A stretch of 64,000 nt of DNA from Leucoraja ocellata (lineage: Eukaryota), in the NCBI GenBank assembly GCA_036785375.1, contig JAWMAR010000253.1, positions 2,232,001 to 2,296,000 on the forward strand. The letters are read 5' to 3'. Under the pieces are notes generated by a model, which made no database searches, was not told where the DNA came from, and saw only the letters and a program-made list of their open reading frames with translations. Position numbers and translations under genes: made by a program. Positions 24,823 through 60,675 of the stretch are shown piece by piece (positions within the stretch are counted from its first letter, which is position 1; each line of letters opens with the position of its first letter).

Positions 24823-24901
24823 CTTTCAGCTTGGACAGCAAGAACAACAGAGAGGAGAGCAGATTTGATCAGTTGTAAAAGTCACATTCTGCTAGTGGCA
24901 C
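24823..24901 (-). CDS. Putative terminal coding exon (short cytoplasmic tail and stop), copy B
   Basis: Polypyrimidine tract plus tacag acceptor, AG|GTATGA donor. A 79-nt homologue with both splice sites occurs at 60597-60675. All three frames stop within 11 codons. Confidence 0.5.
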
Positions 24902-27900
24902 CTGTATTGCAGAGAGAAAGAGCAGGAGAAGAAACATGAAAGAGTTACTCTGAGCGTGGAAAAGAATGGTTTCACAGACTATGCGCTGAGTCTTTGTACA
25001 ATTTCAACCAAGTTACCATGGGACAATAGGCAGAAAATGCTGGAGAAACTCAGCGGGACAGGCAGCATCTCTGGACAAAAAGAACCAGTCTACAGAAGGA
25101 TCTCAACCAGGAACATCACCCATTCCTTCTCTCCAGAGATGCTGCCTGTTCTGCTGAGTTACTCCAGCATTTTGTGTCTATCCCAGGCAAGTGATTCCTG
25201 GTGCCTCTGCTTCACTCACAGATTAGAATTTCACTGTTGCGTTACAACTCTGTCCTGGTTCTTCAGAATGCACAGTTCTTCATCATTTTAACCAATCTTT
25301 AATCTCCAATGAAAGAGTCCTAGCATTTCAAATAGAATCATGCTACATGGAAACAGGCCCTTTGACCCGACTCATCCATGCTGACCAAGATGCCTTCACA
25401 ATGCTCGCATAGGCTCTCTAAAGGTGCTAAAGCCAAAATATGAGCCACCTTGTTGTGATGGGGTATTACCTGGGATTAGACTGCATTGTTTAAGAAGAAG
25501 AATAGTCGAGTACCTGTCTTCATCGTGGTTTGGTTTTTTCTTCCAACACATGTAGCCAACGCTAGCTAAGATGATAGCTCCCACCACAATTGCCGCAGTA
25601 ATCAAGCCAATATGGAGTGCTTGCTGTTGCTTGACACCTGAAAAAGGATCAACATTCAACTGTGATTGCATTAGTGCATTAATGCACAGAAATATAAAAT
25701 GTACTTTGTTTAAAATTGAGAAATGCAGCTGAATGCACTGGTGTGCCGTCTTTTCATATTTCATTTGTTATTTTTAGTGTGTTTTCAAAGTATGTGTTAA
25801 TGTTCTCTGGTTTGTTTTATGTGCGGATGAGGGAGGGGGTCGGGGAAACATTTTTTCAGTCTCTTACCTTGCCGGAGATGCGATTGTTTTCCAGATCGTA
25901 TCTCCAGTCGCTCTGCGGCCCAACATCATGGAGCTGGAGGCCTTGCTCGAGTGACTTTGACTTTGAGCCCCAACGTGGGGACGTGGACTTACCATCGGAG
26001 CCTGAGATCCCTTGTGTGGAGGAGCATCGAGGAGCTCGCAGTCTCGGATAGAGTCTGATGTCGGGAAGCTCCAAAGTCGCAGGAGGTTCGACCAGCCCCG
26101 ACCCGGGGTCCGATCGCCCGGCGCGGGGAAGCTGAGATCCCCCCGATGTGGGAGCTTGATCGCCCCGACGCGGAGGGCCGGCTGCCAGCTACGGGAGCCA
26201 AGATCGTCCCGACAACGGAAGGCTCGAGGCCCCCGATCGCAGGAGACCAAAGAATGGAAGAGATTGAACTTTTTTTTCGCCTTCAATCACAGTGAGGTAT
26301 GTGGAGGAGTCACTGTGGTGGATGTTTATGTTCAGATGGATTTTGTGTATTTTGTTGCTTTTTATTAGTATGACTGTACGGCAAATCAAATTCCTCATAT
26401 GTTGCAAAACATACTTGGCTAATAAAGTATGATTATTATGATTATGAAATTTGATGACAGAAACTGTTCTTAAGGAGACCTGCAAGATCAAGATTGCAGC
26501 CTGAAGTGTCCCCACACTAAAAGTCATCTATCTATGTTCTACAGGGATGCTGCCTGACCCACTGGGTTTAGTTTAGTTTAGACATACAGCGGGGAAACAG
26601 GCCCTTCAACCCAATGAGTCCGCACTGACCAGCGACCCCCCGCACACTAACGCTATCCCATACACACTAGGGACAATTTACAATTATACCAAGCCAATTA
26701 CCTACAAACAAACCAATGCATCTTTGGAATGTGGGAGGAAACCGGAGATTCTGGAGAAAACGCACTCAGGTCACAGGGAGAACATACAAACTGTGTACAG
26801 ATAAGCACCCGTAGTCAGGATCGAACCTGGGCCTCTGGCGCTGTGAGGCAGCAACTCTGCTGCTAGGCCACCGTGTCATTCCAGCACTTTGTGTCTTTCT
26901 TTGTAAACCAGAATCTGCTGCTCTTTGCTTCTACATTTTGTCTGTCAGATTATATCTGGTTTAAACAGTGCAGAGAGTGTTACTGGCAGCAGATCGCTCA
27001 AGAACTGGGGGTGACACATTTATAATTTAGAGCAAAGGATGAAAGTGGAGAGGGGCAAAGATGCGATATAAGGAGAATGATTGTGATCGGGAATTCTCTA
27101 TCCAGGGCTGGGAGTATCAGAAACCATTAGAGTGTTAACGATGGATAGATTGGATGTGGAGAGGATGCTTCCACGAGTGTGAGAGTCTAGGACCAGAGGA
27201 AACAGCCTCAAAATAAAAGGACGTACCTCGAGGAGGAATTTCTATAGCCAGAGGGTGGTGAATCTGTGGAATTTGTTGCCACAGACGGCAGTGGAGACCA
27301 AGTAATTGGCCATTTTTAAGGCGGAGATGGACAGATTCTTGATTAGTGAGGATGTCAATGGTTATGGAAAGAAGGGAGGAGAATGGGGTTAACAGGGAAA
27401 GATAGATCAGCCATGTTTGAATAGCAAAGTAGACCCGATGCGCCACATTGGTTAATTCTGCTCCTCTGGCTCATGAACTTATGGGATGGAAATCAAAAGG
27501 CCTGCAGTGGGGAAAAGAAATTATCAATCCCTGGGACAAAAGTGGGGTGATTTGAATTGCCGTGATTGTTGAATGAGAATGAGAGCTCAAAATGGCCCAT
27601 TGTCGAACAAATCGTCTGTCACCTGAACCTGGGGAATCCGCTGTGGTGGATGTTTGTTAACTTATGTAGGTGTGTGTCATGTTGCTATTTTTTAGTGTGG
27701 GTGTATGGTAATACATATTTCACTGTACCTTAACTGGTATGACCATGAAACCTTGAAATCTTGAAACACCAGGTCTTAGAATATCAAATCCATGCCCTGT
27801 TCTTCATAGGAACTTAGAAACAGGCCCTTTGGCCCATTGAGTCCATGCCATCCATAGATCATATATACTGTCCTTTTCCACAGCGATGCTGCCTGAGTTA

Positions 27901-60020: not shown

Positions 60021-60596
60021 TAGTGTGTAGGAAGGAACTGCAGATGCTGGTTTATACCAAAGATAGTCACAAAGTGCTGGAGCAACTCAGCGGGAAAATC
60101 TACATCCCATGTGTTGGATAGGACATGATGAAAGATTGTTCAATTACGTACCATCCAATGCAAGCCCAGGTAAGCTGTTGCTGATAGACACAAAATGCTG
60201 GGGTAACTCAGCGGGTCAGGCAGCATCTCTGGTGAAAACAGATGGGTGACGTTTTGGGTCAGGACGCTAATTCGAAATGTCATCTATCCTTTTTCTCCAG
60301 AGATGCTCTCTTGTGTAGGAAGGAACTGCAGCTGCCGGTTTAAACCAAAGAGAGGCATAACATGCTGGAGTAACTCAGCGGGACAGGCAGCATCTCTGGA
60401 GAGAAGGAATGGGGTGAGGTCTTTCTTCAGACTGGGTTCCTTTTGTCCAGAGATGCTGCCTGTCCCACTGAGTTTCTCCAGCATTTTCTGCCCATTGTCT
60501 CATGGTAGCATGGGTGAAATTGTATAAAGACTCAACATTCTTTTCCACGCTCAGAGTAACTCTTTCATGTTTTATCTCCTGCTCTTTCTGCAATAG

Positions 60597-60675
60597 TTGA
60601 CACTAACAGAATGTAACTTTTACAACTGATCAAATCTGCTTTCCTCTCTGTTGTTCTTGCTGTCTGAGCTGAAAG
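60597..60675 (+). CDS. Putative terminal exon, copy C
   Basis: caatag acceptor after a pyrimidine tract, AG|GTGTGA donor. Homologous to 24823-24901 and the same length. Confidence 0.45.

What the first reader, a model, noticed from the sequence alone, without database searches (positions are those of the whole stretch)
24823..60675. Palindromic pair of CD2/SLAM-like receptor genes with cross-wired leader exons; possible invertible locus
Seen: V-C2-TM exons point outward in each arm, while the promoter and leader in each arm (L2 plus, L4 minus) point inward. Copy C has no co-oriented leader except L2, 20 kb away in the opposite arm inside B's first intron. B can use L3 (spacer) or L4. Inference: the two transcription units overlap antisense across the spacer, and recombination between the near-identical 9-kb arms would flip the spacer, handing L3 to the other TM/tail variant.
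Basis: partly seen in the sequence, partly recalled or inferred. Interest (0 to 1): 0.8.

Follow-up and report, generated by a model that had tools for sequence, protein, structure and literature searches.

The report
Inverted SLAM receptor gene pair, skate
Two immune-receptor genes of a skate lie back to front as mirror images with identical outer domains but different tails, and each mirror half carries its start exon pointing the wrong way, so how the second gene gets switched on is an open, testable question.

Summary
Arms 24754-37665 and 49006-60754 are inverted copies. Each carries V, C2 and TM exons of a SLAM/CD2-type receptor pointing outward. Each also carries an intact leader exon pointing inward: L2 at 35229-35295 (+) and L4 at 51199-51265 (-). 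A third leader, L3 (40153-40219, -), lies in the spacer.

Arm identity steps from 82% to 95% to 99.5%. The two TM types are old lineages shared with other skates. I therefore read the identical V and C2 exons as arm-to-arm gene conversion in a head-to-head receptor pair, like SIGLEC11/16.

Gene B is wired conventionally through L3. Gene C has only L2, 20.4 kb away in the other arm.

The one transcript contig joining leader, V and C2 comes from a relative or a paralog, so it does not show L2 joined to C.

No read data could test the right arm, which three gaps break, or the spacer's orientation.

Cross-arm splicing and an inversion toggle are geometrically sound but unproven. An assembly artefact remains possible (about 0.25).

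The scan holds unchecked notes of similar SLAM-like pairs on other pieces of this genome.

The parts
24754..37665 (.). Left arm of the inverted repeat (holds gene B)
49006..60754 (.). Right arm of the inverted repeat (holds gene C). Its inner part is broken by gaps 49286-49553 and 52979-53216, and gap 48806-49005 abuts its inner edge.
28830..36953 (.). 99.5% identical core of the left arm. Its mirror is 57823-49554. It holds the V and C2 exons, intron 1 with transposons, and leader L2.
   Evidence: 39 substitutions and 4 indels in 8033 aligned bases
37666..49005 (.). Spacer. It is rich in transposons, asymmetric, holds L3, and contains gaps 44467-44705 and 48806-49005.
30637..30966 (-). Gene B V-set exon (phase 1 at both ends)
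   Evidence: both borders match the transcript-contig joints
29717..30007 (-). Gene B C2 exon
   Evidence: joint 30007|30637
25518..25637 (-). Gene B TM exon (GVK..GYMCW type). The GC donor position reads AC at 25517-25516. A GT donor 4 bases further on is intact.
55675..56004 (+). Gene C V-set exon, identical to B's
56634..56924 (+). Gene C C2 exon, identical to B's
58956..59075 (+). Gene C TM exon (AVQ..GCMYW type), with a GC donor and an alternative GT donor at 59080
61637..61660 (+). Possible short alternative end exon of gene C. It matches the last 8 residues of L. erinacea isoform X6 at 7 of 8 positions, a weak match (E 0.11).
62827..62900 (+). Gene C first cytoplasmic exon (contains ..PLYAVI..). 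It lies outside the arm. Further tail exons lie beyond the window.
35229..35295 (+). Leader L2 in the left arm, opposite in strand to B's V exon. It is followed by a GTGAGT donor.
   Evidence: 'opposite strands' joint 30964|35297
51199..51265 (-). Leader L4 in the right arm, the mirror of L2. It differs from L2 at the position matching 35204.
40153..40219 (-). Leader L3 in the spacer, co-oriented with gene B and 9.2 kb upstream of its V exon. It shows one synonymous difference from L2 and L4.
5293..5353 (-). Leader L1 (with a 6-base in-frame deletion). It points away from copy A. Gap 6033-6232 lies between L1 and copy A.
31783..34777 (+). Tc1-type transposon in intron 1, with a nested insertion at 32127-33505 that bears an RNase H domain. 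Its mirror lies in the right arm.
   Evidence: a Tc1 contig joins 32126 to 33506
35845..36151 (-). Solo Tc1 end, inverted relative to 31783-32088 (95.4% over 306 bases). The two ends bracket the block that holds L2.
26772..28829 (.). Segment present only in the left arm. It sits at the step from 95% to 99.5% identity.
8033..10939 (+). Copy A: V exon 8033-8351 and C2 exon from 10649 with an in-frame TGA at 10651-10653. I read it as a pseudogene.

Best explanation
This is a head-to-head (palindromic) pair of SLAM-family receptor genes in the expanded SLAM cluster of a skate.

Shown:
- Two old paralogs have different TM exons and 3' ends. B has a short-tail type and no ITSM-tail exons. C has tail exons outside the arm.
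- Their V and C2 exons are identical, and the 8 kb core around those exons is 99.5% identical.
- Gene B is wired conventionally: L3 in the spacer, a 9.2-kb intron, then V, C2 and TM.
- Each arm carries a leader cassette of about 200 bases that is inverted relative to its own V exon. The cassette sits in a transposon block bracketed by 306-base inverted Tc1 ends.

Inferred:
- Arm-to-arm gene conversion keeps the ligand-binding halves alike, as in the paired receptors SIGLEC11/16.
- Gene C has no leader of its own in cis. It can be expressed only from L2 across 20.4 kb (through B's first intron and past L3 in antisense), or after an inversion that brings L3 or L4 into line.
- Recombination between the arms would flip the spacer and hand L3 to C.

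My odds: the arrangement is real, about 0.7. Given that it is real, C uses L2, about 0.45.
For: - Inverted arms with an identity step of 82%, 95% and 99.5%, and a 98-99% transition zone at 28830-29228.
- V-set and C2 domains. The best solved relatives of the V exon are SLAM/CDw150 and SLAMF6.
- The nearest proteins are skate RefSeq models named SLAM-like.
- C's TM exon and first tail exon are identical in amino acids to L. erinacea XP_055522185.
- B's TM type matches A. radiata XP_032903549 and XP_032903634 and resembles L. erinacea XP_055520627. B and C are therefore not alleles, and the 99.5% core is younger than the paralogs.
- There are four leader copies only, all intact, with the strands as stated.
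- A 625-base transcript contig joins C2, V and leader at exactly the predicted borders. The leader lies on the opposite strand of the left arm.
- The two arms differ by slippage-type indels. The right arm broke at a (GAA)n run that the left arm spans, which suggests the arms were assembled separately.
Against: - Three gaps break the inner right arm, and one piece there is only 280 bases long.
- No run of the same organism was found. The best holder had 0.47 of the words, and its laid contigs were 95-99% alike. Copy number, arm junctions and orientation were therefore untested.
- Transitions to transversions among the 39 arm differences are 21 to 18. By recalled general knowledge, not checked here, that is low for real vertebrate divergence.
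- The transcript contig is not from this locus (16 of 328 and 7 of 81 letters differ).
- The 90% protein cluster of C's L. erinacea counterpart holds 9 members, all with the C-type TM. No B-type partner with the same ectodomain is annotated there.
- B's TM has no charged residue, so the pair is not a classical activating/inhibitory one.
- All 5 differences between the TM exons change the amino acid, which gives no sign of constraint.
Confidence: 0.55

Rival explanations
1. Assembly artefact. The inner right arm (pieces 49006-49285 and 49554-52978, perhaps also the start of 53217 onward) is an allelic or duplicated copy of left-arm sequence placed into a scaffold gap, or the block is misoriented. 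In that case L4 and the symmetry of the leaders are not real, and C's true upstream region with its leader is missing from the assembly.
For: - Gaps lie at 48806-49005, 49286-49553 and 52979-53216, all in or next to the inner right arm.
- One piece is only 280 bases and is 89.6% alike.
- The 0.49% difference is in the range of heterozygosity (recalled, not checked here).
- Transitions to transversions are 21 to 18.
- No read-level check was possible.
Against: - Contig 53217-64000 runs without a gap from the 99.5% core through V, C2 and the 95% TM region into a unique flank with C's tail exon.
- Contig 24128-44466 does the same for B and L3.
- The TM types are distinct lineages seen in other species.
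- Identity changes gradually at 28830-29228.
- The pieces on both sides of gap 52979-53216 are collinear with the left arm.
Confidence: 0.25
2. Both cross-arm units are active (L2 to C, and L4 and/or L3 to B), they overlap in antisense across the spacer, and arm recombination flips the spacer in the population. L3 then serves whichever tail variant it faces.
For: - L2 and L4 keep the ATG, the open frame and the donor. They are 97-99% identical to L3, while the neighbouring blocks are 92-93% identical.
- C's counterpart in L. erinacea is annotated with this leader type.
- C's tail exon outside the arm is intact.
- The palindrome geometry puts L3 9.2 kb from either V exon.
- Spacer inversions are common in other palindromes (PMC8327919, passages).
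Against: - No transcript from this locus was found.
- L2 and L4 carry a 27-base insertion about 50 bases upstream of the ATG that L3 and L1 lack.
- The intron flank of the cassette is as conserved as the exon, which points to gene conversion rather than selection.
- Six of 8 isoforms of the L. erinacea counterpart start at another first exon without a signal peptide.
- No evidence exists for either orientation beyond the one assembled.
Confidence: 0.2
3. The palindrome is real, but C is a silent, 5'-truncated copy in this species. An inverted duplication or gene conversion copied V, C2 and part of intron 1 without a usable leader. L2 and L4 are relics of a leader cassette inverted by transposon-mediated rearrangement.
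For: - The leader cassette is inverted relative to V in both arms and sits between inverted Tc1 ends.
- The neighbouring copy A is a pseudogene with an in-frame TGA, so decay occurs in this cluster.
- The TM exons differ by 5 changes, all of them amino-acid changes.
Against: - C's TM exon and first tail exon are identical in amino acids to an annotated multi-isoform gene of L. erinacea. That is unexpected for a gene long dead.
- All splice sites of C are intact.
Confidence: 0.2
4. A programmed (somatic) invertible switch like bacterial promoter flipping.
For: Only the geometry: an element bracketed by inverted repeats.
Against: - No dedicated recombinase was found.
- The only transposase reading frame in the arm is split over two frames (33530-33865 and 33850-34551).
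- The repeats are kilobases of ordinary duplicated gene sequence.
Confidence: 0.02

Closest known systems
SIGLEC11 / SIGLEC16 paired receptors of primates (PMC5701461, passages read)
   Same: The two genes lie head to head about 9 kb apart. A region of about 3 kb with the V-set and C2-set exons is kept highly similar by repeated gene conversion, while the signalling ends differ. Here the genes lie head to head with an 11.3-kb spacer, an 8-kb near-identical core holds the V and C2 exons, and the TM exons and tails differ.
   Different: This is another Ig family (SLAM/CD2) in a cartilaginous fish. B has no charged TM residue, so no activating partner is evident. The leader exon inside each converted arm is inverted relative to its V exon, which that paper does not describe in the passages I read.
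Large palindromes of primate X and Y chromosomes (PMC8327919, passages read)
   Same: They have inverted arms with very high arm-to-arm identity, a unique spacer, recombination between arms that inverts the spacer (about half of comparisons between species), and structural instability around the centre.
   Different: Those arms are 8-140 kb and up to 99.99% identical, and their genes lie wholly within an arm or the spacer. Here the transcription units would have to cross the centre of symmetry.
[quoted passage not shown]
   Same: Inverted repeats of 1.6-24 kb mediate recurrent inversions of 5.1-226 kb. The arms (8-12 kb) and the spacer (11 kb) here fall within those ranges.
   Different: No inversion has been observed here. 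It is only predicted.
Mammalian SLAM family receptors (SLAMF1, SLAMF6; PDB 3alz, 2if7)
   Same: They have a V domain without the canonical disulphide, a C2 domain with four cysteines, a TM segment, and ITSM tails in the long form (seen here only in the L. erinacea counterpart).
   Different: Similarity to the solved V domains is remote (E 8e-06 and 4.8e-05). The skate family is greatly expanded. The short read-through tail form is annotated in skates (A. radiata XP_032903549).

Membership tests
CD2/SLAM family receptor | N-terminal V-set Ig domain without the canonical B-F disulphide | tested here: met
   Pfam V-set, E 1.2e-08. The F strand reads ..GLYEMN.. with no Cys after the Tyr.
CD2/SLAM family receptor | Membrane-proximal C2-type Ig domain with four cysteines | tested here: met
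   Ig_3 29.0 bits and Ig_2 24.2 bits, just below Pfam's cut-offs of 30 and 27. Four Cys are seen in the exon translation.
CD2/SLAM family receptor | Sequence kinship with known SLAM members | tested here: met
   The best PDB matches of the V exon are CDw150 (8e-06) and SLAMF6 (4.8e-05). The nearest database proteins are RefSeq 'SLAM-like' models of skates.
CD2/SLAM family receptor | Cytoplasmic ITSM (TxYxxV/I) | tested here: inconclusive
   No plausible ITSM exon lies in the window. C's first tail exon has ..PLYAVI... The L. erinacea counterpart continues to ..TTIYDEI.., and those exons would lie beyond the window.
Genomic palindrome with arm-to-arm gene conversion | Two inverted arms of high identity around a unique spacer | tested here: met
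Genomic palindrome with arm-to-arm gene conversion | Arm identity higher than the age of the copies | tested here: met
   The core is 99.5% identical and the TM region 95.1%. The two TM types recur in other skate species. Gene conversion itself is inferred.
Genomic palindrome with arm-to-arm gene conversion | Both arms truly present in one haplotype | tested here: inconclusive
   Only contigs of other organisms, 95-99% alike, could be laid, and they allow no depth measure.
Genomic palindrome with arm-to-arm gene conversion | Spacer found in both orientations | not testable with these tools
   This needs long reads of several individuals of this species.
Paired (activating/inhibitory) immune receptors | Near-identical ectodomains | tested here: met
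   The V and C2 exons are identical between B and C.
Paired (activating/inhibitory) immune receptors | One partner with a charged TM residue for adaptor coupling, the other with inhibitory or switch motifs | tested here: not met
   Neither TM exon has Lys, Arg, Asp or Glu inside the hydrophobic stretch. B only lacks the long tail.
Programmed invertible switch | Dedicated site-specific recombinase and short recombination sites | tested here: not met
   The only transposase frame in the arm is split over two frames. No other recombinase appeared among the 10 reading frames sent to Pfam. The rest of the window was not searched.

The most novel reading that the evidence does not exclude
A vertebrate immune-receptor locus in which a single conventionally placed promoter and leader (L3) sits on a germline-invertible spacer between two receptors. 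The receptors have identical ligand-binding domains but different signalling ends, so the spacer's orientation decides which one is made. In addition, each arm supplies the first exon of the gene in the other arm (L2 to C, L4 to B), which gives two interlocked antisense transcription units.
Probability: 0.2. Interest if true: 0.8.

Novelty: new variant of a known kind. Interest (0 to 1): 0.5.

Why it matters
If the arrangement is real, it is a head-to-head receptor pair in a cartilaginous fish whose ligand-binding exons are kept identical while the signalling ends differ. That would place the 'paired receptor by gene conversion' design known from primate Siglecs in the SLAM family, at the base of the jawed vertebrates.

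The inverted leaders add a concrete question that cDNA and long reads can answer. Can a gene depend on a first exon in the opposite arm of a palindrome? Does a common inversion switch which tail variant is expressed?

If it is an assembly artefact, it warns that SLAM clusters in this assembly cannot be annotated from the scaffold alone.

Tried and rejected
1. Copy-number test by read depth. This was not possible. No run held more than 0.47 of the words, the DNA holders are kept as contigs, and the laid contigs of the best holder were 95-99% alike.

2. RNA proof of L2 joined to C.
- Raw poly(A) reads of X22 (about 6 in 100 of the run read) gave depth 0 on the V exon.
- X17 gave none on V.
- X15 gave one contig, from a relative or a paralog.

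3. Whole right arm as an allelic haplotig. I rejected this for the outer part. The flanks beyond 24754 and 60754 are unrelated, the TM regions are only 95% alike, and the two TM types recur in other species. It stays open for the pieces 49006-52978.

4. 'Copy A shares the inverted-leader unit, so the design is old.' This is weak. A gap (6033-6232) separates L1 from A, no Tc1 ends lie near A, and A is a pseudogene.

5. History of the leader's inversion.
- Recombination between the inverted Tc1 ends 31783-32088 and 35845-36151 would explain it.
- The present order and the reconstructed order both give a complete Tc1 plus a solo end, so they cannot be told apart.
- The two CR1 fragments beside the block are co-oriented and 80 bases apart on a reference copy. 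They differ in age (85-93% against 73-76% identity to the references), so they are probably not one split element. The test is inconclusive.

6. Other searches in the window.
- ITSM motif search: no plausible exon.
- The alternative first exon of the L. erinacea isoforms: not in the window.
- Tail exons for B left of 25518: none.

7. Gene context of the skate homologs.

8. Literature.
- Three searches for SLAM genes of cartilaginous or bony fish gave 3, 13,802 (15 listed) and 0 papers.
- None is about these genes by title or abstract, so I found no description in the library searched.
- Supplementary files were not consulted. None bears on a claim made here.

Exons and reading frames were searched one by one.
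Full report
**What the window is.** It has 45% G+C, a CpG ratio of 0.46 and six runs of N.
- It is packed with CR1-like LINE, Tc1, Penelope-like and other transposon reading frames.
- The nearest proteins to its Ig exons are RefSeq models of skates: Rhinoraja longicauda, Leucoraja erinacea and Amblyraja radiata, named SLAM-like.
- None is identical to the window, so the species is probably another skate. It lies about 2-3% from the best run holders.
- Other first-reader notes place an expanded CD2/SLAM cluster on this and other pieces of the genome. 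I did not check them.

**The repeat.** The repeat finder and a self-BLAST give arms 24754-37665 and 60754-49006. Identity is not uniform:

| Left-arm stretch | Identity to right arm |
|---|---|
| 24754-25170 | 82.3% |
| 25437-26771 (TM exon region) | 95.1% |
| 26772-28829 | left arm only (2058 bases) |
| 28830-33424 and 33516-36953 | 39 substitutions and 4 indels in 8033 bases |
| 37401-37665 | 89.6% (against a 280-base piece) |

The first 400 bases of the core are more diverged than the rest, so the change is gradual.

**The gaps.**
- Gap 52979-53216 has collinear flanks. It stands for left-arm 33425-33515, which holds a (GAA)n run. Read laying also skipped 33464-33505 as a repeat.
- Gap 49286-49553 stands for left-arm 36954-37400.
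- Gaps 48806-49005 and 44467-44705 have no counterpart.
- No gap cuts an exon.
- Contigs 24128-44466 and 53217-64000 are unbroken. Each carries a full V, C2 and TM set plus unique sequence.

**The genes.** Pfam finds V-set and Ig C2 domains. The V exon's best solved relatives are SLAM/CDw150 and SLAMF6.
- Splice sites read from the sequence give gene C (+): V 55675-56004, C2 56634-56924, TM 58956-59075 and a cytoplasmic exon 62827-62900.
- Gene B (-) is the mirror: V 30637-30966, C2 29717-30007, TM 25518-25637.
- The V and C2 exons are identical in the two arms.
- The TM exons differ at 5 positions, all changing the amino acid.
- C's TM and first tail exon equal L. erinacea XP_055522185 in amino acids. 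That protein runs on to an ITSM.
- B's TM type is that of A. radiata XP_032903549 and XP_032903634, and is close to L. erinacea XP_055520627.
- In B, the GC donor that leads to the long tail reads AC. The GT donor 4 bases on is intact. No tail exon lies to the left of B.
- B would end in a read-through tail like the one annotated in A. radiata.
- So B and C are old paralogs with different ends, and their identical front halves need a later event.

**The leaders.** The N-termini of seven homologs were run against the window. They hit four places and no others, and a sensitive DNA search with the L3 cassette agrees.
- All four have an ATG, a hydrophobic signal-like frame ending ..LLSDTG, and a GTGAGT donor in phase 1 that fits the V acceptor.
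- L2 (35229-35295) is on the plus strand in the left arm, whose V exon is on the minus strand. L4 is its mirror.
- L3 (40153-40219, minus) lies in the spacer, co-oriented with B.
- L1 (about 5293-5353, minus) points away from copy A.
- L2 differs from L4 at 35204. L3 differs from both at the position matching 35258. L2 and L4 carry a 27-base insertion about 50 bases upstream of the ATG.
- Relative to the spacer copy (L3 at 40076-40269, then 40934-41203, then 41946-42417), the leader block in the arm is inverted, while 36148-36616 is not.
- The block lies between 306-base inverted Tc1 ends (31783-32088 and 35845-36151, 95.4% identical).

**Reads.** The look-up of sequencing runs gave no holder above 0.47 of the words and none on record as RNA. 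I laid 29550-35450 with two small 'RNA?' runs, one raw poly(A) RNA run and the best DNA holder.
- One 625-base contig of X15 lies on 29810-30007 and 30637-30964 of the plus strand and then on 35217-35297 of the minus strand.
- Its joints are 30007|30637 and 30964|35297, the latter marked 'opposite strands'.
- This confirms the exon borders. It also shows that this leader type is the true first exon of the family.
- It differs by 1 of 198, 16 of 328 and 7 of 81 letters. That fits the L. erinacea counterpart rather than this locus.
- X22 had depth 0 on V. The contigs of X1 are short and 95-99% alike.
- The reads therefore neither prove nor refute cross-arm splicing, the copy number of the arms, or their orientation.

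**Reading.** The best fit is a real head-to-head paralog pair whose front halves are homogenised by gene conversion.
- This is the design described for SIGLEC11/16: head to head, about 9 kb apart, with a converted region of about 3 kb holding the V and C2 exons (PMC5701461, passages).
- B is conventional through L3.
- C has only L2 in cis.
- C's counterpart in L. erinacea is an annotated gene with 8 isoforms. Two of 8 start with this leader type. Six of 8 start with another first exon that has no signal peptide and is absent from the window.
- C is therefore unlikely to be long dead and needs a leader. That gives the cross-arm idea real weight if the assembly is right.
- A crossover in the 8-kb core would place L3 9.2 kb from C's V exon. 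Such spacer inversions are common in other palindromes (PMC8327919, passages; PMC3961182, abstract).
- All of this remains inference.

**Against.**
- The inner right arm is the most fragmented part of the window.
- A 0.49% difference could be allelic.
- Transitions to transversions are 21 to 18.
- No B-type partner is annotated with the same ectodomain in L. erinacea.
- I put an artefact at about 0.25.

**Limits of what was done.**
- The joined spliced model was not searched or folded. Exons were treated one by one.
- Literature searches for SLAM genes in cartilaginous or bony fish found nothing on the subject in the library searched.

Noticed in passing
window 8033-10939 (+): Copy A is a pseudogene by my reading. 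The second full codon of its C2 exon is TGA (10651-10653) where B and C have CGA. A retroelement with reverse-transcriptase-like frames (8746-10226) sits in the V-C2 intron. No TM exon was found downstream.
   Followed up: partly
window 25514-25518 (-) and 59075-59081 (+): The TM exon has two donors 4 bases apart. A GC donor leads to the ITSM tail in the L. erinacea counterpart, and a GT donor serves the short isoforms. In gene B the GC reads AC, which fits its lack of tail exons.
   Followed up: partly
window 33464-33505 and gap 52979-53216: A (GAA)n run in the left arm lies exactly where the right arm's assembly broke.
   Followed up: yes
window 31783-34777: A Tc1-type element has a nested 1.4-kb insertion bearing an RNase H domain (32127-33505). 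Contigs of two other runs join 32126 directly to 33506, which is the uninterrupted form. The transposase frame is split over two frames.
   Followed up: partly
window 5201-5434 (-): Leader L1 with its upstream in-frame extension (MRMNMSCKSTDAFSTFLE..) closely resembles the N-terminus of L. erinacea XP_055520627. It probably belongs to a gene to the left of the window, not to copy A.
   Followed up: no
proteins P0121, P0115, P0120, P0116, P0119, P0117 (L. erinacea): Six of 8 annotated isoforms of C's counterpart start with a 55-residue first exon that has no signal peptide. That points to an unusual 5' organisation in that species too.
   Followed up: partly
window 35330-35375, 40076-40110, 51120-51160: Degenerate TTAGGG-like repeats follow about 35 bases after the donor of leaders L2, L3 and L4.
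   Followed up: no
window 37727-38553 and 43407-44242: The spacer holds a direct repeat (89% identical) with reading frames that look like the GIY-YIG part of Penelope-like elements. That label is recalled, not tested.
   Followed up: no
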